43,669 nt of DNA, taken from the NCBI GenBank assembly GCA_900088475.1, contig FLMG01000801.1, forward strand, positions 1-43,669, given 5' to 3'. Of this stretch, positions 1 to 27,207 are shown piece after piece. The notes under the pieces were generated by a model. That model searched no databases, was not told where the DNA came from, and saw only the letters and a list, made by a program, of their open reading frames with translations. Every line of letters starts with the position of its first letter. Position 1 is the stretch's first letter. The translations under genes were made by a program, and so were the position numbers. Source of the stretch: Hyphochytrium catenoides (lineage: Eukaryota > Protista > Hyphochytriomycota).

Positions 1-3000
1 TTCCCCTGAACCGTCTGATGAGACCCTTACCGTGCCGACCACATCTTTGTAAGGCAATGTACGGCAGCATTTTCCCCGTAGTCGATGAAGGACCTCTGAT
101 GTTCTCTTTCTTTTCTACCAATGAACCTTTCGCTGCTGTTATCACTCTCTCGCCCTACAATGACCTCACTGACGGTCCTTGTTCTTTATTCTCCTGACAC
201 CTGACAAAAGGACTTTTAACAGTGAGGAGCCCTGGCGCTGTGGTGGATAAAGAAGACTGACTTCTCCTCTTGCGGGTAAGCAATGCCTGGCTCCTGCCTG
301 TCATAAAGCCCAGTCAAGCATCTTCGACGGTCGTGACTCACACTCCTCCCTCCCTCCTTCCTCATACCGATGTGAGAACGCATCAAGGCAGGAAGAGACG
401 AAGTGGCGGACGACCGGCGGGACTTCCTACTCCTCACCAGGAGCGTGGAGTGACTTGCCGTGTTCAAGAAGAGGGTTCTTAGGGAAGGAGGCGGCTGAGG
501 TGAGTCAGTGAGACAGACAGAGAGAGAAAATAGAGCGGGAGCTAATAAGTCGAGAGACAGAGTGTGAGGAGAGAGGCAGGAGTGGGCGGAATTGGATTGG
601 GAGAGATAATCAGTACACTCCCGCAATGTTAGCAAGGATGGCGAACGATAAGGATAGGTAGAGGTCAAGCCCTTCTAGCCGTTAACGGCTCCAATGAACC
701 AACTGTGGTAGGTTCTGATCCTATGATGGCCGTCGTAGTTGTATGACGGCTGTACAGGTGGCGTACAACGGTGTCCCTAGCTAACGGACGAACAGTAGAA
801 GTTCGAGACTCAGAAGCCACGCAGGCCTGGCAGCAGCAGCAATGATCGATTCGATGAATGAGGAGAGAAGAGAGTGATGAGCTAACAGCGCCGCAGCGAT
901 CATACTTCGTCTCTGTTTAGTGATGACAAAGAGAGAAGAAATATCCATAAACAACCCTGCTGACTGATGAGTGCTGCGAAGGATAAGGGTTGTCACTGCT
1001 CCCCATCATCATCATTATTATTTGAGGCGCTGAGCAGAGATGATGATTATAGAGTAAAAGATCAATAAATCTGCATCATCCTGCCGATTCACTGCTCCCT
1101 CATCGCGCCTAGGGAGGGCCTTGGTTGTGGTGGACACCACCACTGCTGGTGGTTGTCAAATACTACACCACCCTCCTTCACCCCCCCTGGCTGCTGGTTA
1201 TAAGAAGCCTTTTATAGTAGAACCATCTCCACTGCTTCCTTAATACTGTGCTAATTCGATCAAAGCTCACCGGTCGACATGGACAACTTTGTTTGTCAAG
1301 GAAGCCGCACCTTCTAAAGTGAGATTATCATCAGTCAACAGGCCTATCCGTCGTCCTTACTGTATGACTCTTCGAGCAGGGAAGAAACCATCATCCAACA
1401 GAAAGTACCCTACTATCTCGTATTTTATTATCCTCTTTCTTCGACTCAATCATCACAGCAGCCATAATCGCTTTCTTATTACTTATGGAAGACTCGCGTC
1501 TCCTCTGTGAACGAAGCAACGCTAGTAGGTCCGGCCACCAATCTCTGACCATGACGATAAAAAGAGGCCAGTAATTCAGAGTATATAGCACTACTTTGTT
1601 GTTGCCTGTGATTTCCAATTGGTCCAGAGATCGAGAAAAGCTGTGGTCCGAAAAGCGAGCCTCCTGCCTGATGCCATCACGCCTCATTGTTATCGTCTGA
1701 GAGTAAACTTTGGAAATAAAGAAGAAAGTAGACATGATACAAGAGTTGTTGAGGCTATCACAGTATATTCTACTTGATGTGGAGCGGAGGTAGGTGAAAG
1801 GATGAGACTGTATCGCGGAGCCTCACGGATGGATCAGTAGGCGGCCAAGCTTTCACCAGCGATATCAGCTCTATCACCACCCCGACAGTAAATCGAAATG
1901 ATGATGAAGGATGAGGTGGGTTGTTCCTTACCGAAGCCTGGCTAATCATCCCATCATCACCGCCTCTGCCGTCCTCCTCCTGCTCTCTTGGTCTTCGGCT
2001 TTGTTTGCGGTGTGAGCAGCGGGACTATTGTTAGGTGTTCTTTGTTTACTTGTTGTACTATTAATATAGACATAACCTCCACCAGCTAACAGAAAGCTCT
2101 ATCTTTTACCCATAATACTTCAAGCAGTAATGTTAGATGTTGGACGACGCTGCTACAATTGTTGGGGCTATGTGTGGTAGTTTAAAGAGCTCCTCCTTCG
2201 GGTGTAGTAGGGTAGGGGGAGATCAAATCCTTGCATGTTTATTCTCTCCCTGCTCAAGCCTATGTTTTTATTATTATGGCCCTCCTCCTGAAGATCATTA
2301 TCCATAATAAGCCGCATTGTGAAAAAAATGATATTTAACCAGCAGCGGCAAGAAGCAACACCACCGGTCACTGCCTTTTTCAGTCGCCGGGAAGTTGATT
2401 CTTGAGGCAGCACACATCAGGAGATAATAAAGAGCAACAGAATAGAGGTGTAATACTCATGAGAACAACCTGCTTCTGCAGGATGCTGGAGCAACAAGAA
2501 GGTCACCGCTGCTGAATAATGATTCTTTTTATTGTTTCATTGTCATTGGCTGCCCTGGCTTACTATTATCAACTTATTATGGTGGTTGTCGGCTACCCTT
2601 TTTTTTCCCGCTTATATGCATTACCTTCTTCTTGAATCAGTCCTCTTACTTACCCTCCACTACATCAAACAGTAGTGCAGCTTTGCTATTCAAATCTTTG
2701 TGTTCTTTGCTATGCTGCATCCTCAATGACTATTTGTTACTACAGATAAGAACAGCAGCGAACAGCCAACCATCATACAAGTGACATCATCCGGAGTGGG
2801 GCCACTCCTCCAGGGAAGGACTCGAACGTTTGCTTATGAAGTACTAAAGAAAGCTCCATTCTCCTTTGCTGTCAAACGAGGTCTATTGAGGCTTCTCGCT
2901 GCTTGTCGCTCTTTCTCACTTGTGGGTTCTCCCTCTGCATTTTTATCTCTATTGCTTGTTCAGCAGTCATACAAGCAAATGATCCATCTCCCTTCCTTCC

Positions 3001-5322
3001 TCTCGGGCGGCAGCCACATGAAATAGATTGCTGTTATTTCAACTTACTTTCTTGTAGCCCTTTTATGGAATCGAGCTGCCGACCACCATCATGGACTTAC
3101 TTCCTGCTGCTCATTTTTGTCATTATCGTTGGCCAGTCTAACGCCTTCCTCATGAAAGCCCCGTTTGTAATATTGACAAGAGGAGGAAGCAGCAGCAGCA
3201 CCCTCTGGTGGGGAGAGACGAATGACTTCACCTCGTCATCATAGTAACAATTCCTTGTAGTTGCTACAAGTATTGGGGGTACAGTACTGTAATGCAACCT
3301 GTCATCAATGGTGGGTCCTCTTCCCTGGGGAGCTCTATGATGTCCAACAGTCAGCGCTTAATTATGGTAGAAAATGTGTGGTCCTATTTGCAGTCAAAGG
3401 CTAGGCTGCTTTGATGGAAGATGTGGCCTGTCGCTTCTGTAGGTTTCAAAATGATCTTGTCTTCGAACCAGGAACTATCTACTGTACAGCATGGTCTGAT
3501 GGGTTCAGAAAGGAATCGTTCGAGGCTTACTGAGTACCACAGCCGAATGTCATAGAAATCGGTCATGCACATAAGCGCCCATCAAGGGAGATTTCCCTTC
3601 ACAGGCCTCGAGGAGTGGGTGGGCGATGGGAGAGGAAGCTTGTGAGGTGGAGTAGCCGTTGTTATGGATAAATAACACTCTTCGTCATCAAAGCGTCACC
3701 CCATTGGCTTGTCCAGTCAGCATCAAGGGATTCATCTTAGGGCAAGTGAACCTTTAGGCAATGTCGCATGTACATCTACAGAAAAGATAGACCAAAGCAA
3801 GAAGGTCGTCTTTGTAATAAGAACCTGGACAACTTTGAACAGATTGAATTTTTGAAGTCTAGAACTATTTGTGGTAGATTTTGGGAACAGTAGTACAACC
3901 TTTTCACTCGCACTTATTATTACGGACAAATAAAGGTACAACCAAGAATTACTGTACTGGCATTTTATGATGTGCCTCGTCTCCCCTATCCTTTGCTTCG
4001 ATCTTTATGGAAAAAAAGTTATTGTTCGGAGTCCTGTTAGACCATCAATAAGTACAGCGTTCAATAAGCGTTTAGTAAACAGGAATCGCGTAGAATTTTA
4101 CCCAATGTAGAAAGGACGCTTTGTACCCCCTGGAACACTTCGAATTCTCTTATCTATCTATGTAATAAATTTACAAAGAAGGAGGCAGCCTTGGATTGCC
4201 ATTTGCCTGTTGTCTCTTTTAGGGCCAACATACAAAGACCTGTCCACCCCCTCCTTGCCCCCCCAGATCCTTGATAAAACAGGCAAGGAACCAGGAACGA
4301 AACATATCAACAGGAAAAAGCAAGAAACAGCAATCTTTCGCTGTAGGAGCTCGACTCTTTTCTCGAAAGTTCATGATGTTCCCGTCTGAAAGCTTCGCGG
4401 CGTTTTGTTTTCAAGATAAAAAGGGCCTACAGTAGGGGTTACATATGAGGAGTAGTGGCCCGTCCCACCCCAGCTAAAAATACAGTAACCAGTTCCTTTG
4501 AGAAAGTTGGCCTTTCGCGAACAGCGATGTCGTAGGAGGAGCAGACATTAGGTGCACAGCCTCTGACTTAATGCGAAATTCTCAGGATCCACCACACAAT
4601 ACCAAAGGCCGGCTGCCCCCCACCCACTGTCGGCCTTTCTCTCCTCCCATAGCTTATTATCATCAATGTTCATTTCCCAAAGCTTGATCCCTCCTGCTTA
4701 TCAAAGGCTAGGCTCTTCTCCTCCTTCTGCCTCTGTTCCCCTTACCCCGTCGCGTCCTGTTATCGTCGCACCTCTTCTGTTCGCCCACGGCCACGTGCCC
4801 CATCCTTCCTTCATCTTCCTTTGATCTCCTCCCAAAGTCCCACGTTCCAGCCCACCTGACCGAGTTACGGTCAGGTCCACAGCCAGGGAGACAGACAGGC
4901 TGACAGGTCAACAACAACCAGCAGATCACACCTTTCTGAATCCATCGCTCCCACAGACACACAGAGGAAAACGGTGATGAGTGAGGAGGATGAACCCTTC
5001 AGAGGTGTGAACCAATTGCAGAGACCACAAGCAGTTCGTAGCAGGTAGGCAGCAGGGTCAGGAAGAGCATACACAAGGCGGGAAGCCCGCTGCTGCGCGT
5101 CGCCCTATTCTTTTCCCCCTCCCTGATCTTTGTGGCTGCCGGACAGCACGCTCAATCAGGCCTAGCTTATTGCCAACAACAGGGGCATCTCATCTGAGAC
5201 AGAGGTTTTTATTAGTAAGGGTGGAGCAGCATCGACCGCTGGAGTGAGAAGGTTTAGCTCTTTGCTGGACGCGACATAAGATCGCGAGAGGAAGAGGTGC
5301 AGGCAGGAGGAGCTCATTAATT

Positions 5323-13664: not shown

Positions 13665-16600
13665 TCAAAGTGGGATATAAGACTGATGAAACGGACGTAC
13701 CATTTTGTCATCTCTCGTAGGGAAACGCTCACAAAGCTTCTGAAGGGCTCTGGGGCTAAGCCTTGGAATGCGAGACGTCACTGTAGAAGGGTTCCTAGCA
13801 CTCATGCTTAGCCTGAGAGCTTTGGCAACACTAAGCAGTGATCCGGGACTGTTGCTTCCAGATCGAGAAAGAAGACCTGTGGCTGCCGAGAAGTCGAGAA
13901 TTGGCTGCACTTCCCCGAGAGCTATTAGAGGGGCGGCCTTGTCAATGGTGTTCCCAGCTCCATCTCTTTCACTCTTGATGCTATCCTTACTCTCTAATCT
14001 TTTTCGACCCTCCGTTTTTCTTGATGGTGGAGATGACCTCTGTTTTCTTTTGATGTTTGAGTCGGTCCTCGACGGGACTTTGGACCAGTCAAGCTTCTGA
14101 AATTGGATAGCGTAGGGTTTGCGCTTCAAATAAGAGAAGGATGGTGTCTGACGTCCAACAAAAGCATACGGTACGTCAGCGCCTTAGTCAAAAGCACCAC
14201 ATTCGAAGAAAGAAGGGCATAAGAGGACCAGGTTTGCTAAACGGGAAGGCGGATGCTTGCTATCCTGCTAGGGTCATGTACCTCTGGACTCTGAGACCTC
14301 TCCTTAATGTACTCTGCCTCGCCTGTACTATATTCCCTATCCTCCTTATCGCAATCCGTCGAGATAACTCTCTGCGGTCGCGTAAGAGCCAATAGAGGGG
14401 TGGAAGTCAGCCTTGCGTCCTCAGAGAGAAAATGCGTCCATATGAAGTCCAACAAATGTGGCAGCAAAAAAATGAAATATGATAACTCAGTTGGATGCTG
14501 GCCGACCTGTGTGCAACCCTTTTCTGGCTGCTTTGGCACGTTCTTAACTGCCTTCTCTTTGAAGCGTGTGTTGTGACTCTTTCCAGTTGGCTGGTGAGAC
14601 GCTGAGCCATGCTGCGGTGGCAAGTGCAGCTTAGGGATCCCTTTGCTGCCCTCCTTAAGACTCACAGCGGCACGCAACTGACCCCTCACGAAGTCCTTCG
14701 GAACCCTCTTTTGGAGGGGAAACCAGCGCCCTGAACCCTCAGAAAGGCCCAGGTCCTGCATTTGATTAATCAAAGGAAGTACACCGACAACAAACACTCT
14801 AACGCATACTGACCATGAGAGAGAGAGGGATCAGAATGCTTCCGAGAAAGCCATCGCCGTTCACGTTTGTGTTTTCTGAAAGCCAGAGTTCCAGCTCCCA
14901 TTCTGATAGATCCCCTATCCCCTCCCCGACGGATGGGAACTCTAACACCACTGCGGGGGCCGATTCTTAGAACAGTCAGAAAGGGAATGAATCTTACACA
15001 CTCACCTTCGTCCTTTAAAGTCCAGGAAGGATCTGGGGAACGGCTGGCGGGAGTCACATGACAAGAAGCAAGAATAGCCGATCCCTGTTCAAAATGGGTT
15101 CAGAAAAATGTCATTTAGCCAATGGCACGACAGCGGGAGGGGCAAGTTCTCACCCTCTTTAGGTTTAGATCAAGGTAAACTTCGATGTCTCTGTACTGTG
15201 TGAAGTCAGGACCATACGAAGGCAAATCTCGCACCTCGAAGGGCCTCACCTGCAATTGCCATGAGAAATAAGAGGCAAATGCCAAGAACTGAGATTAGAG
15301 GAACAAGAAAGGCAACCTATCAGCAGTCACAGGCCCTAACGCTAACAGATGGAGATGTTACCCAAGCGGCAAGGCAAACGCCCACTTTGAGCAGTCTGGT
15401 CCTCATGGGGCGAGGGACGAGAAATGAAGGTCACTTACGTGGACTCCTTCCCAAAACGCCTTCTGTTTAGAGCTGGAAGGTGATACACTTTTGGCCGAAG
15501 ATCCAAGTCCGACTTCATTAGACAACCTCTAGAGTGACGCTACTTAGCTAAATTCTGTAGGCGAAAAGTTAGGTCTAATAAGAGAAGCACCTGCTCAGTG
15601 TCCTGGCTAACCGAAACTTGGGAACCCCGATGATAGCTGACTGGCGGTTGATGGTCTATCTGGCTGTGGGTCTGACTTCTGTGGGCTACATGCAGCTGGA
15701 AATAGAGCAGTAGAGTCAGATCACTGCTCGAACCAAGACGGCAAACTAGGTATCACACATTGGCTTGCCGGTATCTCTCTAAGGATTCTCTTAGAGCTGT
15801 TAGATGGCCCTTGGCACCTCGGCGCGTGACAAGGTCTATTATGGCCCCCTTAGAGCTTTTCAGGTTATCGGCGAGGCGTAGAAGAAACGCGTCACTCTCA
15901 GCAGTAGTGCTATAGATACCCAATTTGAAGAGAGGGGACTGCTATTCTTAGCATCCGGTTCACCGCAATAGGATAGGTAGGCTTTGTTACCTTGCTGAAG
16001 CCTGTCTGCCTTGGACCTCCTTCATGACATCTTGCGTCTGTAGGCAGTCATTCTTAAGATCCCGAACTTGGCTAGAACCCCATCGACAACGCACTCTATA
16101 GCCCTGAACCAGAGAGAAGTGAGCTTTAGAATCTTGATCAGGCCTAATTGGGGCTAAATCTACCTCAATGACCGCCATTAGGACTTGTCTTTGCCCTTCG
16201 TTAAGCGCCAACCAGCCTGAGAGGCTTCTGCCTCTTTCTCTGTCAAAAGAGTTGTCTCCTGTTTCAGCATCGCTAGGGGCATCAGCTCCATTACAGGTTA
16301 GCGGCACACTTTGCGTGGCCCCCACAGCTCGAACCTCTGGTGACCATGCATGCTGTGTCAGGGGTTTCGGCGACATGTCCGAACGGCTATTGTCACTTTG
16401 TTGCCCACTTTGACAGTCATCTATTGACCATCTTTTAGGGCTCTCTGAAGCCAGAGGGGGCATATCTAGCTTAGCAGAGCCCTCAGCCTCCACCGAGGAA
16501 TGAACCTGTTTCTCCAGCCTAGAGGTGAACGATCCGACCCCCAACATCGAGGATTCCGGCGTAGGGGCCGCTTCAGGTTTGCTTCCCGCCACCTCAATGT

Positions 16601-17564
16601 CAGTATTGACTTTGACCCATTGTTGAGGCGATAATAGCTCAAATTCATCTCTTTCAGGAAACGTATGGCCATTCAAAGGAAGGGGTAAACCGTGGGGGAG
16701 GCTGTCGTCTGCCCTTATAGAGGCAACGGATTCGTAGGTCCTCTTCGGTTCACCCTGAAAGCTCTCGTCAGAGGCACTCAATGACGAGAAAGCAAGGGGC
16801 TCACTGTCTGGATGACTTTCAGATGCAGCACTGCGCTGAAGATACGCAGCGAGAGTCCAAGTGGGTCTGGGAGTACTAAGAGTGGCCCTATGAGTATCCT
16901 CATCCTGAGCAAGACTGAAGTCAATCTTCGCCGATTGCCCTATAGGCGACTCTAAGGCCCCACGGGTCAGGTTCCTGTCAGTAGAACCACTGCGTTGAAG
17001 AAACGAGGCTAGGCTCCAAGAGCCCGCAGGCGGCTGCCAAGTAGTAGTCTTATCAGTAGGCGATGGGTGCGTCTTTGCTCCATAAGTAGCTAGTGTATCG
17101 CATGTCCCAGATAGTACAAATGCCTTGTCCGCTGTGGAGATGTTCGATGAATCTTTTACGGCTTCCGCAAGCACTTTAGCAGAAGGAGAATCGTAAGCCG
17201 CCAGAGACTCACGTGACTGCACTTCTTCGGCGGCTTTAGAAGCTTTGCTCACCTCGCAAGTATCGTGGATGGCGAAGGAACGTCCTCCATAAAATGTCCC
17301 ACCAGCAGATTCTCGCGAAGCAATGACCTTGTCGTGCTTGGCACTTTCCAGTTCTTGTTGCTGAACGAAATCTTCGTAGGAAAGTGGCAAAGGTCTATGG
17401 GCAGAAAGAGAGAACCAGACGCTCTCTTCTCCAAAACCTAATCCTGATGACAAGTGCAACGCTCTTTCCCTACTGGGTCTACTTGTAAGTGCACCACTAC
17501 TACTATCTTGCAGTTTTCTACGATTCTGGAAGAGCTTGAGCGCCAAGGGATCAACTTTTGCCAT
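13665..17564 (-). CDS. Large multi-exon protein: long Ser-rich disordered N-terminus, C2 domain, basic C-terminal tail (3' end uncertain)
   Basis: Long first exon (MAKVDPLALK..., donor at 15990). Small exons at ~15.25-14.66 kb splice to VHVRPFEVRDLP...SPDPSW...WELELWLSENTNVNGDGFLGSILIPLSLM|DLGLSEGSGRWFPLQKRVPKDFVRGQLRAAV, which matches C2-domain signatures. The last recognisable exon has YLKRKPYAIQFQKLDWSKVPSRTDS. Confidence 0.68.
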
Positions 17565-18278
17565 GTTAAGTCTGAAGCACTTGTCAAGTCGAAAGCACTC
17601 TATTTCACGCTCCAAGCGAAGCCCATCAGCCTCAGCAGGAGAGAGACAACTTCCAAACTGTCCATGACCTCACTTTCGTCGACAACCCAGCAGAAAAGAG
17701 ACAGCTTCCAGTCTGTCATGGCCTCACTTACTTCGGCAAAGGCTAGCTTGAGCCTGTGAGGCGGCAACTTCCTGCTTCAGATGATCCAGAGGTCAATAGC
17801 GGTCATCCTCGGCCGTCCGAGGAGCAGCTGCAGCGCTCTATAGTGCTCAGAGCTTCTGAAGTTAGGGTAGGTGACCTTTGATTTGGCGGGAAGGCCGAGA
17901 ATCCCCCTTCTCACGAAGTTCAAGGTTAACCTTTAGTTATAGCGATAGAGTGGAAACCCCCCTTCTTCGAATGGCAATGCAAATTTTTCTGTGGTCTCTG
18001 AATTTGATCAGAACTCGTACTTAACGTGTTCTGCTCTGTGCCGTCACCATCGGTTCCTCATACTGTCCTTATCGCTGTCAGGAGCCTTCGTACAGGGAGA
18101 AGACGGCACTGCAGACCCATGCGGAGTCCCTGGAAGAGCTCGGAATAGTCTCAGATGCGTGGTCCATGACAGGTTACGCCAGGAAGAATGAGGCCAACCT
18201 TGCCCAGGGTTATGACTTGGGAGTCATTCTCTTCAAGGGCGCCACCACGAGCTTGTATGCTGCGGCAGCTATGAATCC

Positions 18279-21200
18279 ATGGCGTCTTTAACTGTTCAGC
18301 GTGCCTCTAAGAGCTCAACTAGGCCTTTACACCGGGAGGAGGATGGCCTGAAGGAGGATTCTTTGCTAGACTTAGATGCTGCTTGCTCATTCAACGACTC
18401 TTGCATCGGTGGTGTCTATCATATCCCCCGCGAGGTGCTGGAAGACGGAGTCCCGGTGTTAGACTCACCATCTCCAGCCGGTAAGGTGGTCCGGAGACTA
18501 AAGAGTCCGACTGTTTTCGTTGCCAAGAATCGTCAAACGGACTCTCCGCAAGGCTCTGCTCTGGAAGGTGGAGCGACTAGCTCTTTCATCCAACTGGTGG
18601 ACAATACTTGGATTTGTGAGCGAGACGCCACTGGCAAAGTAATGGTCCGGCAAGGGGAGTACCCTGATAGCCTTTATGGTACCAGTTCTGCCAAAGATGT
18701 GCCACAAGAAGCGTCAGACAGCCAAAGGCAATACAAGGGTGTCAAGACTTGGCGAAGCCCGGGGAGCTATCTCCAGGTTACTCCATTTGACTCCTTGTCA
18801 AGTCCTTTGGCGACCAAAGACCAAAAACAGCTTCGTCGCAGCAATCCACAAAAGGAAGTAGCAAGTCCGTCGCCAATTGTAGCGCGTCAGCGGCAGGGTG
18901 GCGCATGCTCGCTCACGGCCTTCAGTGCGAACAAGAAACAGTCTGCGTCTACCACCTCTGACGCTTTCGGACTCTCCTTAGCCTCTCCTATGCCAGGGGA
19001 TAGTATAAGTTGCATAGTAAGCAAAAGGAGAAAGCTATCCAGTGCGGGTTATGCAGGGAGTGCGTTGCACTGGGTACGTCGAAGTCAGCTTCTGTCGCCC
19101 TCTAAAGTTCGTCAAATTGCCACTTACAGACGTGTTTCTCCTTTCTCACCTTTTGCAGTCGGCAAGTCCGCTTAGTACGAGATCTCCCGGGACGAAGCAG
19201 GATAACAATAGAGTAGGCTGCACCCCCAGCAAAGGAACAACGATAAAGGCGTGGAAGGACTACGATGCCGCTTCATCAAGAAGGGAGGAGCATGGCGAAG
19301 CCAAGAAGACCGCTGACAGTATCCAGAACCCAGTGAAAGGCACAAACATATTCCTGACTCCTGAAGGACAGAGAAGCAGAACTCTTACCTCAAAGGAGCC
19401 CACCCTAAGCTCAACGCCTCACAACTATCCTGAAAGTCGAGAGAGAAGAGAAGATGAAGTAGGGGCGATGGTAGCTGAAGGTGCAGAGAATGAGCACGCC
19501 CCTCTATGCACAAATGGAGGAACGTTAAGCATCAGTAGTCAAAGTGAGAAAGTAATTCTGGCACAAGGGAAATCGTCAATACTGTCATCCCCTTTGATAG
19601 CGGAACAGGTGAAGCAACGGGTGGTAACCGCAACTCCTCGAGGACTGCAGTCAAGTGTGAGAGATGGCACACCCACGAACGTTCTTGTGCCGGCAGAGCT
19701 GGGGACACCGACGACCATCGGCACGCGAGAGGTACAGAAGCCTGTAAGTTTGTCAAATGCACTGTGCTGCCTATCTGGGCGAATGTTCTCGTACTGAAAT
19801 ATATTGCTTAGAACCTGGTAGGAGAAGATGGAAAGAAAGTACCAGCAAGAGAAAAGGGCGAGCAGTATCATGGTCTGCTACTAACTCCTCCGCTAGAAGA
19901 TGCTGGGGATAGCATTCAGAGCCCTATGGTGAACCAGACACGGTCGGCAGCTCTTCGCCGTCGGTCATCTGTAAGGTGTGAGCTGCCTCCTGACGGCGCA
20001 ACCATAATTGAAGGAGAGGAAGAGCTCTCTAAGATCCGTAGCGCAAGGGCCACAGCGGGAGAAAGAATGGTCAACGTGTTAATCAACGGCGCCCAAGCGA
20101 CCCGCACTTTTTATGCCGACGGCACCCCTCAGACCTGTTCCAGGCGAAGCCAGCAGACTTCTCCCGCAGTCTTATCCGTGGGCCCCCTTGCGGAAAAGCT
20201 TCAGAGTCAAGGTAACAAGGCCTTAAACAAGAAAGGGCAAAGTATGAAAGAAGGAAATTCAGGCACTGGCTTTACAGAGTTAGCAGAACACCAAAGCCAC
20301 CTTGCTCCTATCAAAAAAAATCTCAATCTCAATCTAAGCACGGTAGAGGAGCATCTCTCTGTGGCTTCCCTAGCTAAAACCAAGATGCTCCAGGACGGAA
20401 TGACGGTCCGCGGGCGATGTTCAGTATGTTATCTTGAAGCTTCCCACCGTATAGAAGTCCAAGAGATCGGCAATGGGTACACTTACCCGGCTCTGGCAGG
20501 AGACGACACACAGCACGATAAACCAAGCGTGTTGCTATGTGCAGTTTGTCAAGTCCCCACACACATATATTGTCTCCCCCTCGATCTCTTAGAAAACAGA
20601 CATTGGGCAGAAACCGATGTGATCACAGACAAGAGGAAGAAGCTACGCGCCTTGGTCTGGACATGTTTTTCCTGCCAGAATGAATCGGCCTCGTCTAGGG
20701 CTTCGTCAAGGTAAGTGGCGAGCTAGAGGCATCCTGCTATAGAACTGTTGTGCGTTAGCATTTTATTGCGTCGTCCCTCCGGCCTCGAAGAACGCCACTG
20801 CCACCTCCTTTCCTTATCTTGCAAGGTTCTGAACATTGTGTCCATTCCAGAGCATGCCTTCTTTGTCCAGTTGAGGACGACAAGCCCTGCTGGTTGCCCA
20901 CGAATAGCGGTCATTGGGTGCATTTTCTTTGTGCTCATCTGGCTGGGCTTGGAATAGAACCAACCGGAGAAGTGCAAGGTATCAGTACTACAGTCGATGC
21001 GAGATAGGCCAAGTTGTTGGCATGGTCAAAGAACCAGGCAACCATAAGAGATAGAGCTCGAGTCAATGCATGCAGAAGGCGATAGAGGGAACACCTATCT
21101 TACATAGGATGAGAGAAAGTATGAATAGGAGCCAAATTTGAGTCTAACGTAGAGCTTGGCGCTAGTCTCAACCTCGCAAGCGGACCAATGGGCCAAGCGC

Positions 21201-24004
21201 TTCAAACAAGATGCTTGTGAAGTTTGTGGAGCAGGAGAAACGTATCTGGTTAAGTGTGAGGAAGAGGAATGTACTACTCGCTTCCACCCGCTGTGCGCTC
21301 TGGAAGTGGGAAACGACTTTTCCCGACGGACATGCCTAGATGATAGGGTCCCCAGCCACTTCTTTTGCGGGTCAGTAAACCTATTACTTGGTGTCTCGGT
21401 GGTACAACCTCCAGTGCAAACAAGCATAACCACGACGACTACTAACTGTACCTTGGCCATTAGGAGGTGCTCCAAGAAGCGCGCAGATGAGGATGCTGCT
21501 GCTGATCGCTGCGGGGTCTGCAAGCGAGGAACCGCCAGGAGTCCATCAGTGAGCTGCGAGCTATGTCAGCAATGCTTCCATCCGGTAAGACCGGCTAAAA
21601 AGTTCTCTTCTGCTCAACCCCACACACTTTTTCCCTTACCAAGCGCTTCTCAGAGATGCCTTCCCCGAAGCTCGTATGTTCCGCAAGAGGATGAGAAATG
21701 GTTCTGCGAGCATTGCCTAAAAGCAGGCCTGGACGAGGCGCTCATAGCACCAGCCACCATTAGAAAGAATGGAAAGTTGGTGCGTAGCTATAGACGGTTG
21801 TCCCTCCATTGAATCCCTCTTTGACATTGCCCGCCCAGTTCGCTTTAGGACTGGGGCTTCATGAGACCGATAGCATAAGTTCTTGAAGTAGTAGCGCTCA
21901 TGTTTCTTGGGTGTGCTTCCTTCGGGTCGGACTATCTGTGCTATGCTGATCTTTCTCCTATCCCGCAGGTTAAGGTGTATCGCAAACTGAATGAACACAA
22001 TATTTTTGCGATGGAGAGGCCCTGCTTTATGACTGGAGGCACTCTTAGCACCAGCACCACGAGCGACAGTCTCCTATTTCGGCAAGCCAGACGTAGGAAA
22101 ACAACTCCTTCTAAGCAAAGTGTCAAAGCTAAGACCACTGAGAGTGAAGCCGAAAGTGAAGCCGATGTGGACCTGAGGAAAGAGGACTCTCGCTTAAGCC
22201 GTCTCCGCCATCCGAGAGTCCTGGAGCTTCTAGCTGGAGACGAGAAAAAGCATCAGCTGCAGAGGGCACAGCTACTCTACCACTATCAGCTGGTATGTAG
22301 AAGAATGCCTCCTACTGTTATGCGCCTTCTGACGCGTTGCCCTCGTCGTCACAGGACATGTCTAGATGGCGCGAGCGGTTACTCTCAGGCTTCTCTTTGC
22401 TGCTCGTTGGCATTGGCTCAAAGAAGGGGCTTACAAAGGTAAGAGTTGTGTGCAGGGGCGTGGTAGAATCCATAAATCGACACTCACTCCTTTTATGGCC
22501 TCCTGTGTTCTAGATATTCTTTGATGAGGTGCTAGCTGCCGATGCTGGTGACCAGCTCATTGTTCACGGGCATAATGCCGCTACTACTATTGAAGGCCTG
22601 CTATCTTATATCACGATTGAGTTCTTGCTGATTCGAAAGCAGTTTGCGAGCCCAAAGGATCAGGTCTCTCCAGCTTTCAAACTCCACTTACTCATAAATA
22701 ACCGCTACACCTCTACGCTCGACCTCGTCATTGATCTTCTGCCTCTCTTTAATGGCGAGACAATCCGTCCGTCATTTGCTTCCCAGCTCACATCTATGCC
22801 AAATCATTGACCCTCTATAGAGCCGGTATATCGCATCGCAGTATAGCAACAGCAAGAACAGGCGTCTTTTTCTTCTTATTTATAACATCGAGGCTCCAGC
22901 ATTACGGGAGCACCAGGAAGTGCTTAGGTGAGTTCATTGCCTACATATCAAAAGCTACCTTGATTGTTTCTCTGTATCTAACTTCCTAGCGTGACTTCAG
23001 CGTATTAGCGGCGGCCGATCGCATCCACCTTGTATCTACTGTCGATCACGTCAATACGGTTCTTCTCTGGGACAAGAGGCTAGTTAGCCTCTTCAACTGG
23101 GTACGTCAAAGTGACTATGGCTCTGCTTTAAATTGGCCTTTAGTATAAGCTCTTCACACCAATGAACCGACCTCTAAGTTATCGCAAGTGTTCCTTGCGA
23201 GTCGCCTCTCTCTCATTCTCTGCAGGATGCCCACTAGTGCCTCTGCCATCTATCGTGCTCTCGCTTCCCATAGTAATCTGCTGCTTGTGCGCCAAACCCT
23301 GGTAATTTTAACGATAGGCCGAAATTGAGGTTCATACCTTTTCGCCCTACCTCGATGGCGAAGTGACCTACGAGCTACCAGTCTCTGAGAGCCGTGGTCA
23401 GGTGACTGCCCGTGGGCTGAGTTTCATTCTCAGGTCATTGACACCCAGGCATCGAGAGATTCTATTTATTTTGGCCAAGCAGCAGCTCAGCAGTTCGTCC
23501 GGGACAGGTAGGTGGCTTGGAGCATCAAGACTGTGCTTATGTGACAGATTACCCTTTTCCTTATGGTCATTAATTTTCAAAGCTTTTGTCAGCGATCTCA
23601 TTTCCCTTGTTGCTAAGTCCTAAAATTCTCATCCAGGGAAGCAGGTTTGCAACCAGCTATTAGTTGTTATCCCCTTTCTTCTATAAGCTATTGTCTGGTC
23701 ATGCTTATCATCCCTCCCCTTAGGCATGGAATTCTGCGAGCTGCTGCAGCACTGTCAAGAAAATTTTATTGTACAGAATGATAGAGCACTCAGGACACAT
23801 CTTGTTGAGCTTAAGGTTAGAGCATTCGTAGTGTCCTGCACAATATGAGCTAAATTGTTTGTCGTGCTCTTTCGATAGGATCATCGACTAATCTCGGTGA
23901 AGCGCAGCAGAGATGGCTCTATGCAGGAAGTGCTTCATATGCCACTCTCCGCAGACACTCTTCGTCGGGAAATTGTAGACAAGCTTCGAGAAGAGTTTGC
24001 CTAG
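18279..24004 (+). CDS. ORC2: Origin recognition complex subunit 2 with N-terminal disordered region, PZP module (PHD-Zn knuckle-ePHD) and extra PHD finger; 15 exons, ~1343 aa
   Basis: ORC2 blocks: RWRERLLSGFSLLLVGIGSK; LIVHGH; LFLLIYNIEAPALR; IHLVSTVDHVNTVLLWD; FNW; HTFSPY; GLSFILRSLTPRHREILFILAKQQL; GMEFCELLQHCQENFIVQNDRALRTHLVELKDHRLI. Exons: 18279-19073, 19159-19743, 19812-20710, 20851-20978, 21166-21370, 21464-21584, 21654-21779, 21969-22292, 22355-22438, 22514-22663, 22821-22927, 23001-23100, 23318-23507, 23724-23815, 23879-24004 (sum 4032 nt, GT-AG, phase-compatible). The ORC2 identity is strong; the single-transcript fusion is less certain. Confidence 0.85.
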
Positions 24005-24275
24005 CCATATGAAGGCCTAACCATAAAGCCTTCCGTGGCCCCTCCCCCTCTCTTTCATGCTCCTCTTCCCTTCTTGTATAACCCTTTCCCCGGCCCGGTT
24101 CTTCATTATACACGGACCTGCATAGCAAAACTTTTTGGCGGTATCTATGTCCAGAAAATGACATCCTTTGGCCCCAGTGGAATGTATCAAGCTTCCTGAG
24201 AACTCTTTACCCAATAAATATGAAGATCAGCCCAAATCGCCGCCTTATCTTCCGTGGATTAGCCGTCATCAGCAG

Positions 24276-27207
<2,932 letters not shown>

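What the first reader, a model, noticed from the sequence alone, without database searches (positions are those of the whole stretch)
18279..24004. ORC2 fused to a BRPF/JADE/AF10-type PZP histone-reader module plus a third PHD finger
Seen in sequence: the fragmented ORFs from 18279 to 24004 can be joined through 14 canonical GT-AG introns into one ~1343-aa frame. It contains PHD1 (CSVC...CAVCQVPTHIYC...WTCFSC, ~20418-20675), a Zn knuckle (CLLCP...WLPTNSGHWVHFLCA, ~20855-20930), an extended PHD2 (CEVC...VKCEEEECTTRFHPLCA...FCGRC, ~21213-21470), a canonical C4HC3 PHD (CGVC...CELCQQCFHP|RCL...WFCEHC, ~21510-21716), and then a full ORC2 domain with winged helix. The key junction is a phase-0 intron, 21780..21968 (TTG|GTGCGT...CCGCAG|GTT), and only ~190 nt separate the two exons. 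Established knowledge: chromatin-reader domains in ORC normally sit on ORC1 (BAH; BAH+PHD in plants). PZP modules belong to the HBO1/MOZ scaffolds BRPF and JADE and to AF10, and HBO1 complexes act at replication origins. I know of no ORC2 carrying PHD/PZP. Inference: this lineage may target origins through histone-tail and DNA reading by ORC2, a Rosetta-stone fusion linking PZP readers to origin licensing.
Basis: partly seen in the sequence, partly recalled or inferred. Interest (0 to 1): 0.9.

Follow-up and report, generated by a model that had tools for sequence, protein, structure and literature searches.

The report
ORC2 fused to histone-reader fingers
This soil protist (probably Hyphochytrium catenoides) very likely makes its replication-origin protein ORC2 as one long protein with a JADE/BRPF-type chromatin-reading module on the front; an unrelated-looking microbe encodes the same combination in one unbroken reading frame, so the fusion is real as a type, though no RNA data could confirm the splice here.

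Summary
On the + strand, 15 exons (18279-24004) join through 14 GT-AG introns into about 1296 aa: a long disordered N-terminus, PHD1, Zn knuckle, extended PHD (together a PZP), a further C4HC3 PHD, then a complete ORC2 (RecA-like domain plus winged helix).

The critical phase-0 intron 21780-21968 could not be tested with RNA. No RNA run was listed, and the four runs I laid were all DNA.

The best support is comparative. A 912-aa protein (P0032) is encoded as one uninterrupted ORF on a 23.9-kb genomic contig of a GC-rich, apparently intron-poor eukaryote. It has the same PZP-PHD-ORC2 order and aligns collinearly with the window model. The two ORC2 halves group together in a tree.

The junction intron has the gene's best acceptor, a typical length, four in-frame stops and intron-like SNP density.

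I put about 0.8 on a true fusion. The rival is two abutting genes: stop at 21810-21812, ORC2 start at ATG 21900 or 22011.

The PZP is not a BRPF/JADE scaffold, because no EPL1/EPcA region was found. Histone and DNA reading is inferred, not shown.

I found no paper describing a PZP- or PHD-bearing ORC2. A PWWP-ORC2 fusion in marine metagenomes and a PHD-bearing ORC4 cluster in Ascomycota show that reader domains on ORC are not confined to ORC1.

The parts
18279..19073 (+). Exon 1: ATG start and a disordered Ser/Pro/Lys-rich N-terminus (aa 1-265)
   Evidence: 298-aa ORF; codon score 0.23 bits per codon; donor GTACGT at 19074
19159..19743 (+). Exon 2: disordered region (aa 266-460)
   Evidence: 251-aa ORF in frame after intron 19074-19158; codon score 0.28
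19920..20710 (+). Exon 3: disordered region, then PHD1 of the PZP (about 20418-20675), with long inserts in two loops
   Evidence: Ligand pattern C2-C2-H-C-C2 read from the sequence. Pfam PHD only 10.7 bits. P0032 has the same long basic insert before the last Cys pair.
20851..20978 (+). Exon 4: Zn knuckle of the PZP (CLLCP...HWVHFLCA)
   Evidence: zf-HC5HC2H_2 profile positions 3-29, 15.5 bits; aligns with P0032 CKLC...GWVHVTCV
21166..21370 (+). Exon 5: extended PHD (ePHD) of the PZP
   Evidence: zf-HC5HC2H 32.5 bits and zf-HC5HC2H_2 29.5 bits, both above the Pfam cut-offs
21464..21779 (+). Exons 6 and 7 (21464-21584, 21654-21779): third, canonical C4HC3 PHD finger split by intron 21585-21653, then a short linker ending in ...RKNGKL
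   Evidence: Pfam PHD 24.7 bits; spliced sequence CGVC...CELCQQCFHPRC...WFCEHC
21780..21968 (+). Junction intron: phase 0, 189 nt, GTGCGT...CTGAT...polypyrimidine...CAG. If it is not spliced, the PHD frame stops at TGA 21810-21812.
   Evidence: Acceptor score 8.65, the best of the gene's 14 introns and in the top 0.7% of all AG sites in the window; donor in the top 5% of GT sites. Four in-frame stops. Three SNPs. Genome mean intron length is 208 bp (PMC5795050).
21969..22292 (+). Exon 8: linker/ORC2 N-terminal region up to the start of the RecA-like domain. Contains the in-frame ATGs 22011 and 22029, the rival ORC2 starts.
   Evidence: Codon score 0.23 bits per codon; the ORC2 profile alignment begins in its C-terminal part
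22355..23507 (+). Exons 9-13 (22355-22438, 22514-22663, 22842-22927, 23001-23100, 23330-23507; exon 13 may start at 23318): ORC2 RecA-like domain
   Evidence: Collinear RecA-like_ORC2 hits; alignment with ORC2 homologues; indels between alleles fall in the predicted introns
23724..24004 (+). Exons 14 and 15 (23724-23815, 23879-24004): ORC2 winged-helix domain and TAG stop
   Evidence: WHD_ORC2 32.9 and 15 bits

Best explanation
The stretch 18279-24004 is one 15-exon gene of a diploid stramenopile, probably Hyphochytrium catenoides. Its product is an ORC2 subunit whose usual disordered N-terminus has been extended. Upstream of a complete ORC2 RecA-like domain and winged helix it carries a JADE/BRPF-type PZP module (PHD1, Zn knuckle, extended PHD) followed directly by a further PHD finger.

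Shown: the domains, their order and the reading frame; and that the same architecture exists as a single unspliced ORF in another eukaryote.

Inferred:
(a) That intron 21780-21968 is removed, so that one polypeptide is made here.
(b) That the zinc-finger module tethers the origin recognition complex to nucleosomes by binding the histone H3 tail and/or DNA. It would then do in cis on ORC2 what the BAH domain (or the plant PHD) does on ORC1 and what JADE/BRPF-HBO1 complexes do in trans at origins.
For: 1. Another organism encodes the fusion in one ORF. P0032 (912 aa) is one uninterrupted ORF at 1546-4284 of locus L004, on a 23.9-kb genomic Logan contig with genes on both strands. It carries zf-HC5HC2H_2 (77.5 bits), zf-HC5HC2H (70.6), PHD (52.6), RecA-like_ORC2 (219) and WHD_ORC2 (39).

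2. The window model and P0032 align collinearly. One HSP runs from the end of PHD1 through the Zn knuckle, ePHD, third PHD and linker into ORC2 (E 8e-18); a second covers ORC2 (E 4e-38).

3. In an 86-sequence ORC2 tree, the window and P0032 fall in one group with the PWWP-ORC2 protein P0095 (SH-aLRT 90). That group lies inside a clade (99) separate from animals, fungi and Dictyostelium.

4. The PHD exons and ORC2 exons are on the same strand. Only 189 nt separate exons 7 and 8, and both are in phase 0.

5. The junction intron looks like an intron. Its acceptor is the strongest of the gene's 14 and in the top 0.7% of AG sites; its donor is in the top 5% of GT sites. Its length fits the genome mean of 208 bp (PMC5795050), and it contains four in-frame stops.

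6. The 10-codon tail that would end a separate PHD protein looks non-coding. Its codon score is -2.45 (coding 1.57±2.28; intron -1.13±2.02). It holds 2 SNPs in 33 nt, against 4.1 SNPs per kb in exons and 13.1 per kb in introns among the SNPs listed.

7. A profile search that allowed candidates of 267-849 aa and included window exon pieces found no stand-alone ORC2 of this organism. This is weak evidence, because the organism's proteins may simply be absent from the collection.
Against: - There is no transcript evidence. No RNA run was listed, and all runs laid were DNA with no joints.
- The rival is physically possible. The PHD frame has a stop 10 codons past the donor. In-frame ATGs at 21900, 22011 and 22029 would give a 365-400-aa ORC2, which is the size of the plant protein as I recall it (from memory, not checked).
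- The genome is compact here: the convergent Dus gene ends 272 nt after the ORC2 stop.
- The junction donor scores slightly below the other 13 donors (5.1 against 5.4-11.2).
- The codon score of 21900-21968 is indeterminate (0.5).
- The window's PZP is divergent. PHD1 and the Zn knuckle are below Pfam thresholds, and the PDB search with the ePHD gave only NSD3 at E 0.059.
- Window and P0032 ORC2 share only 28-38% identity and both sit on long branches, so their grouping could be long-branch attraction.
- The closest plain ORC2 relatives (P0007, P0011) have no PZP gene beside them.
- Histone or DNA binding is untested.
Confidence: 0.8

Rival explanations
1. Two abutting genes. A PZP-PHD protein of about 927 aa ends at TGA 21810-21812. 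A separate short ORC2 of about 365-400 aa starts at ATG 21900, 22011 or 22029. The adjacency would be a relic of fission of an ancestral fused gene, and the GT...AG pair is not used.
For: Stop 10 codons after the donor, and three in-frame ATGs. A short ORC2 N-terminus is the plant-like condition (my recollection, not checked). Compact genome: 272 nt between convergent stops. The junction donor is the weakest-scoring of the gene. No RNA was available to exclude it.
Against: Only 87 nt (to ATG 21900) or 198 nt (to ATG 22011) would have to hold a 3' UTR, a promoter and a 5' UTR. The acceptor at 21968 is the best in the gene and in frame with the donor; my rough chance estimate for such an in-frame pair is about 1%. 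The tail after the donor looks non-coding. The same domain order exists as one ORF in P0032. ATG 21900 would give a hydrophobic, Cys-rich N-terminus unlike the basic N-termini of ORC2 homologues.
Confidence: 0.12
2. Both forms are made. The fused mRNA is the main or a regulated isoform, and an internal promoter or retention of the junction intron also yields a PHD-only protein and/or a stand-alone ORC2.
For: Retaining the intron gives a clean stop at 21810, and ATGs downstream could restart translation. The genome paper reports multiple splice forms for 406 gene models.
Against: There is no direct evidence for any isoform. The rest is as for the first rival.
Confidence: 0.08
3. The fusion is real, but the zinc-finger module no longer reads histone tails. 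It serves as a DNA-binding or protein-protein module, for example contacting other ORC subunits, Cdc6/Cdt1 or a HAT.
For: The window's PHD1 has long loop inserts and is sub-threshold in Pfam. The third PHD has Cys where H3K4me3 readers have the cage Trp, and its N-terminal segment is basic (KRGTARSPS) where H3K4me0 readers are acidic (read; reader classes from my own knowledge). BRPF1's ePHD is known as a DNA binder (my own knowledge of the literature).
Against: P0032's PZP matches the H3-bound JADE1, JADE3 and BRPF1 PZP structures at E 1e-22 to 6e-30. Its third PHD matches CHD4, KDM5B, DPF, AIRE, BAZ2 and UHRF1 fingers, which I know as readers of the unmodified H3 tail.
Confidence: 0.25

Closest known systems
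ORC2 (origin recognition complex subunit 2; Pfam PF04084 RecA-like_ORC2 + PF24882 WHD_ORC2)
   Same: Complete, collinear RecA-like domain and winged helix: 241 bits against a profile of five homologues, plus Pfam hits on exons 9 and 11-15. Falls inside the ORC2 tree.
   Different: Other ORC2s found here (about 85) have only a disordered N-terminus of roughly 100-350 aa. This one has about 620 aa of disorder plus PZP and PHD. It is also divergent: 30-37% identity to any homologue.
PZP modules of the HBO1/MOZ scaffolds JADE1-3 and BRPF1-3 (PDB 8ge0, 8gdx, 11af, 6u04, 5erc), yeast Nto1, AF10, PHF14
   Same: PHD1, Zn knuckle and ePHD in the same order with the full ligand pattern. P0032's PZP hits JADE1 at E 6e-30, JADE3 at 8e-27, BRPF1 at 2e-22, Nto1 at 7e-18 and AF10 at 1e-15.
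   Different: No EPL1/EPcA HAT-binding regions, bromodomain or PWWP. Long basic insert in the last loop of PHD1 in both fused proteins. A further PHD follows the ePHD after about 10-20 residues. It is attached to ORC2 rather than to a HAT scaffold.
Reader domains on ORC1: BAH in animals and fungi; PHD+BAH in plants (Arabidopsis ORC1b, PDB 5hh7; PMC7058166)
   Same: A chromatin-reading module covalently attached to an ORC subunit. P0032's third PHD matches the ORC1b PHD at E 2.7e-9.
   Different: Different subunit (ORC2, not ORC1), a different and larger module (PZP+PHD, not BAH or a single PHD), and an independent origin. PMC7058166 reports PHD only in Chloroplastida ORC1.
P0032, unannotated 912-aa ORF on Logan contig SRR23287145_43779 (L004)
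   Same: Same PZP-PHD-linker-ORC2 order; collinear alignment; grouped with the window in the ORC2 tree.
   Different: No introns; 65% GC; short N-terminus (84 aa before the PZP); about 140-aa acidic/basic linker against about 40-100 aa here; much better conserved PZP. The organism is unknown.
PWWP-ORC2 (P0095, 1374 aa, marine metagenome contigs L087-L089)
   Same: ORC2 with an N-terminal chromatin-reader domain in a single ORF. It groups with the window and P0032 in the tree (very long branch).
   Different: No WHD hit in Pfam.

Membership tests
ORC2 | RecA-like ORC2 domain (PF04084), complete and collinear | tested here: met
   Exon pieces hit profile positions 43-67, 130-152, 160-191 and 196-251 in order. 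The spliced sequence scores 241 bits, E 8e-76, against a profile of five ORC2s covering model positions 21-327 of 331.
ORC2 | C-terminal ORC2 winged-helix domain (PF24882) | tested here: met
   Exon 14: 32.9 bits (cut-off 27.3), profile positions 9-37. Exon 15: 15 bits, profile positions 39-62.
ORC2 | Groups with ORC2 orthologues rather than other ORC/Cdc6 paralogues | tested here: inconclusive
   Placed inside a tree of ORC2 sequences, but no ORC3-5 or Cdc6 outgroups were included. The Pfam family assignment is specific to ORC2.
ORC2 | Assembles into ORC and is needed for MCM loading | not testable with these tools
   Needs biochemistry or genetics.
PZP module (PHD-Zn knuckle-PHD) | Extended PHD (zf-HC5HC2H / zf-HC5HC2H_2) above the family threshold | tested here: met
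   32.5 bits against a 29.1 cut-off, and 29.5-30.6 bits against a 27 cut-off.
PZP module (PHD-Zn knuckle-PHD) | Zn knuckle (C-x2-C...H-x3-C) directly before the ePHD | tested here: inconclusive
   The pattern CLLCP...HWVHFLCA is present and aligns to profile positions 3-29, but at only 15.5 bits, E 0.02. It aligns with P0032's knuckle.
PZP module (PHD-Zn knuckle-PHD) | N-terminal canonical PHD1 (C4HC3) | tested here: inconclusive
   All eight ligands can be read (CSVC, CAVC, H, C, CFSC), but with 34- and 30-residue loop inserts. Pfam PHD only 10.7 bits, E 0.57.
BRPF/JADE HAT scaffold | EPL1/EPcA regions flanking the PZP that bind the MYST acetyltransferase and ING/EAF6 | tested here: not met
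   No Pfam hit at E<=1 on exons 1-3, and none in P0032 at E<=0.01. Short or divergent EPcA motifs could still escape Pfam.
PHD finger (PF00628), third finger | C4HC3 ligand pattern and a family-level score | tested here: met
   CGVC-x14-CELC-x4-H-x2-C-x15-CEHC after splicing. PHD 24.7 bits against a 24 cut-off, so borderline.
H3K4me3-reading PHD subclass | Aromatic cage with Trp two residues before the His ligand | tested here: not met
   That position is Cys (CQQCFH) in the window and Gly (DKGFH) in P0032. This is sequence inspection only; the criterion comes from my knowledge of BPTF- and ING-type fingers.
Rosetta-stone fusion (Marcotte sense) | The two halves occur as separate proteins in other genomes and fused in at least one | tested here: met
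   Stand-alone ORC2 in about 85 other sequences, including the intronless P0007 and P0011 with no PZP neighbour. PZP occurs in JADE, BRPF and AF10. It is fused in one ORF in P0032. For the window itself, the fusion rests on an unverified splice.

The most novel reading that the evidence does not exclude
A protist lineage, or several, has hard-wired nucleosome reading into ORC2. An ancestral ORC2 captured a JADE/BRPF-type PZP plus a PHD finger, and in a related marine form a PWWP domain. Origin choice in these organisms would then be set by ORC2 reading the H3 tail and linker DNA rather than by an ORC1 BAH domain or disordered regions. The fusion would also be a natural Rosetta stone for the HBO1-JADE/BRPF link to ORC seen in animals.
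Probability: 0.3. Interest if true: 0.8.

Novelty: new variant of a known kind. Interest (0 to 1): 0.62.

Why it matters
How eukaryotic ORC finds origins without sequence specificity is still an open question. The known chromatin-based answers are ORC1-BAH reading H4K20me2, the plant ORC1 PHD reading H3K4me3, disordered-region tethering, and HBO1-JADE/BRPF acetylation at origins.

An ORC2 that itself carries a JADE/BRPF-type PZP and a further PHD would be a different solution on a different subunit. It would also give a compact natural construct for testing whether histone-tail and DNA reading is enough to position ORC.

Three findings together suggest that ORC subunits have acquired chromatin readers repeatedly, more widely than the ORC1-centred picture implies: the same architecture in a second, distant eukaryote; a PWWP-ORC2 in marine protists; and a PHD-bearing ORC4 cluster in Ascomycota.

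The claim for this genome still needs a single RT-PCR or long-read experiment.

Tried and rejected
- RNA evidence. The look-up of sequencing runs with kind rna on 20400-24000 listed nothing. Kind any gave only DNA runs of organism A, a soil metagenome and three tiny runs. Read laying on 18200-24100 (5,901 letters, four runs) showed contiguous genomic contigs and no joints.

- The search of protein representatives with exon 13 gave 12 hits: plain ORC2s, short metagenome fragments and one bacterial false positive, P0002. The fragments sit on contigs under 900 nt and were uninformative.

- P0032 as a whole query returned only itself and one fish PHD protein. Low-complexity words probably swamped the 8000 candidates.

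- P0032 region 690-805 returned 31 ORC2s and no further PZP fusion.

- Alignment A2 (P0032 plus window exon pieces) was misaligned and I did not use it.

Alignment A4 gave 80 metagenome ORC2 loci, none with a PZP nearby by tblastn.

- Exact look-ups of two neighbouring window ORFs, hoping to see the source annotation, found nothing on record.

- The Atlas search on an L004 neighbour did not reveal the organism of P0032. A full-text search for its run accession found no paper.

- Withdrawn argument. I first thought the conserved ORC2 'YF' motif (YFAMHR in P0032) was the window's IFAMER, which spans ATG 22011 and would have excluded that start. But a second candidate, LFRQAR, lies downstream, and a profile HMM aligns neither. 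This is not evidence either way.

- Extending exon 10 past 22663 to fill a gap against homologues. The codon score there is intron-like (-3.4), so I kept the donor at 22664. That boundary and the exon 13 acceptor (23318 or 23330) remain uncertain.

- The bacterial-type promoter/terminator scan of the junction region found nothing and does not apply to a eukaryote.

Full report
**What is there.**
The window is eukaryotic: about 50% GC, with many short GT-AG introns. Reading the + strand from 18279 to 24004, I rebuilt a model of 15 exons and 14 introns. It gives 3891 nt and 1296 aa without an internal stop.

All 15 exons score positive on a codon-usage model trained largely on other coding sequence in the window (0.04-0.28 bits per codon). 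Indels between the two alleles seen in the DNA runs fall in the predicted introns, with one exception in exon 3 seen only in a low-depth contig. Among the SNPs listed, density is 13.1 per kb in introns against 4.1 per kb in exons.

**Domains.**
Pfam places the following:
- zf-HC5HC2H and zf-HC5HC2H_2 on exon 5, above threshold.
- The start of the same profile on the Zn-knuckle exon 4, below threshold.
- A borderline PHD on exons 6-7.
- Collinear pieces of RecA-like_ORC2 on exons 9, 11, 12 and 13.
- WHD_ORC2 on exons 14 and 15.

PHD1 is visible only as a ligand pattern with long loop inserts. A profile of five ORC2 homologues scores the spliced C-terminal part at 241 bits.

**The critical junction.**
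Exon 7 ends at 21779 (…RKNGKL) and exon 8 starts at 21969. The intron between them is 189 nt, phase 0, GTGCGT…CAG.

If it is not spliced, the PHD frame ends at TGA 21810-21812. In-frame ATGs at 21900, 22011 and 22029 could then start a 365-400-aa ORC2.

No RNA data could be obtained. No RNA run was listed. The runs that hold the stretch are DNA. Laying four of them gave contiguous genomic contigs and no joints.

**Organism.**
Earlier notes of this scan identify the genome as probably Hyphochytrium catenoides (one of them rests on the known HcCCR gene). This fits what I saw:
- DNA runs dated 2011 and 2017, matching the GAIIx and HiSeq data sets of the genome paper.
- A heterozygous genome, which the paper describes as diploid.
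- A near-identical hit in a soil metagenome.
- A reported mean intron length of 208 bp (PMC5795050).

That paper used only a small 454 transcriptome of 6202 contigs.

**Comparative evidence.**
A profile search with ORC2 homologues plus the window's ORC2 exon pieces returned 60 ORC2 proteins. One of them, P0032 (912 aa), carries zf-HC5HC2H_2, zf-HC5HC2H, PHD, RecA-like_ORC2 and WHD_ORC2.

It is encoded by one uninterrupted ORF (L004 1546-4284). The contig is 23.9 kb of genomic DNA, 65% GC, with closely packed genes on both strands and long unbroken ORFs. In that organism no splicing is needed to make a PZP-PHD-ORC2 protein, and there is no stop between the halves.

The window model aligns with it collinearly, from the end of PHD1 through the Zn knuckle, ePHD, third PHD and linker into ORC2 (E 8e-18, plus an ORC2 HSP at 4e-38). 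Both proteins also share a long basic insert before the last Cys pair of PHD1, and a third PHD only 10-20 residues after the ePHD.

In a tree of 86 ORC2 sequences, the window and P0032 fall in one group together with a PWWP-ORC2 (SH-aLRT 90). That group lies inside a clade (99) that excludes animals, fungi and Dictyostelium. All three have long branches, so this is supportive but not decisive.

**Signals at the junction.**
I built position weight matrices from the other 13 introns of the gene.
- The acceptor at 21968 is the best of all 14 (8.65 against at most 5.2) and lies in the top 0.7% of AG sites in the window.
- The donor is in the top 5% of GT sites, though slightly weaker than the others.
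- A CTGAT branch-like motif and a pyrimidine tract precede the AG.
- The intron has four in-frame stops.
- The 10-codon tail after the donor has an intron-like codon score (-2.45) and 2 SNPs in 33 nt.

My rough estimate for such an in-frame donor-acceptor pair arising by chance at the boundary of two separate genes is about 1%.

A separate-gene reading would also need a 3' UTR, a promoter and a 5' UTR inside 87-198 nt. The genome is compact, however: there are 272 nt between the ORC2 stop and the stop of the convergent Dus/zf-met gene.

Weighing all this, I put about 0.8 on a true fusion here, about 0.12 on two abutting genes (a fission relic), and the rest on mixed isoforms.

**What it most likely does.**
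P0032's PZP is closest to the solved, H3-bound PZPs of JADE1 (E 6e-30), JADE3 and BRPF1, then Nto1, AF10 and PHF14. Its third PHD matches CHD4, KDM5B, DPF2/3, KAT6A, AIRE, BAZ2A/B, UHRF1, and also Arabidopsis ORC1b. From my own knowledge, those fingers mostly read the unmodified H3 N-terminus, and BRPF1's ePHD binds DNA.

The most likely mechanism is therefore that the module tethers ORC to nucleosomes through the H3 tail and DNA, in cis on ORC2. This is inference.

The window's own module is much more divergent. Its third PHD lacks both the cage Trp of H3K4me3 readers and the acidic N-terminal segment of H3K4me0 readers. A DNA-binding or protein-protein role is therefore a live alternative.

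Neither fused protein has the EPL1/EPcA regions of BRPF/JADE scaffolds. They carry a PZP but are not members of that scaffold family.

**Distribution and novelty.**
- Plain ORC2s closest to the window (P0007, P0011; intronless genes on metagenome contigs) have no PZP gene beside them.
- None of 80 ORC2 loci from JGI metagenomes has a PZP nearby.
- A survey of ORC evolution in 132 eukaryotes mentions PHD only in Chloroplastida ORC1 (PMC7058166).
- Papers holding both 'ORC2' and 'PZP' concern HBO1 complexes, not a fusion.

Within what I could search, the architecture is undescribed. P0032 is an unannotated ORF.

The theme itself is known: a reader domain on an ORC subunit. A PWWP-ORC2 is encoded as one 1374-codon ORF on four marine metagenome contigs. 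An Atlas cluster of 713 mostly Ascomycota proteins combines ORC4_C, AAA and PHD.

I therefore rate it a new variant of a known kind.

**Limits.**
- There is no transcript evidence.
- The organism of P0032 is unknown.
- The exact donor of intron 10 and the acceptor of intron 12 are uncertain.
- The 5' part of the gene (exons 1-3) rests on long ORFs and in-frame splice sites only.

Noticed in passing
L087:3271-7395, L088:2890-7014, L089:82-4206 (protein P0095): A 1374-aa PWWP-ORC2 fusion is encoded as one uninterrupted ORF on four marine metagenome contigs (Tara and JGI). It groups with the window's ORC2 and P0032 in the tree, on a very long branch. This is a second kind of chromatin reader on ORC2.
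   Followed up: partly
ESM Atlas cluster, rank 22 (no window coordinates): A cluster of 713 mostly Ascomycota proteins of about 921 aa combines ORC4_C, AAA and PHD. Many filamentous fungi therefore seem to carry a PHD finger on ORC4.
   Followed up: no
window 24276-25431, - strand: A convergent downstream gene has a dihydrouridine synthase (Dus) piece and a C-terminal zf-met/zf-C2H2_jaz finger. Its stop lies only 272 nt from the ORC2 stop, which shows how compact this genome is.
   Followed up: partly
window 18200-24100: The DNA runs carry two haplotypes. Among the 40 SNPs listed there are 13.1 per kb in introns and 4.1 per kb in exons (8 synonymous, 8 non-synonymous), and allele indels lie in introns. 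This fits the diploid genome reported for H. catenoides.
   Followed up: partly
window 22056-22446: A 2025 soil metagenome run (X4) holds near-identical 151-nt contigs of the ORC2 exon 8/9 region including the intron. The organism or a very close relative therefore occurs in that soil sample.
   Followed up: no
window 15987-17615, - strand: A 542-codon ORF upstream, head-to-head with the gene about 660 nt away, is Ser-rich and has no Pfam match. No exact product is on record in the gene collection.
   Followed up: partly
P0016 (928 aa, Dispira parvispora, NCBI): Annotated as 'F-actin-capping protein subunit beta' but carries F-actin capping plus a full ORC2. It looks like a merged gene model of two neighbours, and is a caution for reading fusions from annotation alone.
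   Followed up: no
I used it only as coding training data. No exact product is on record.
   Followed up: no
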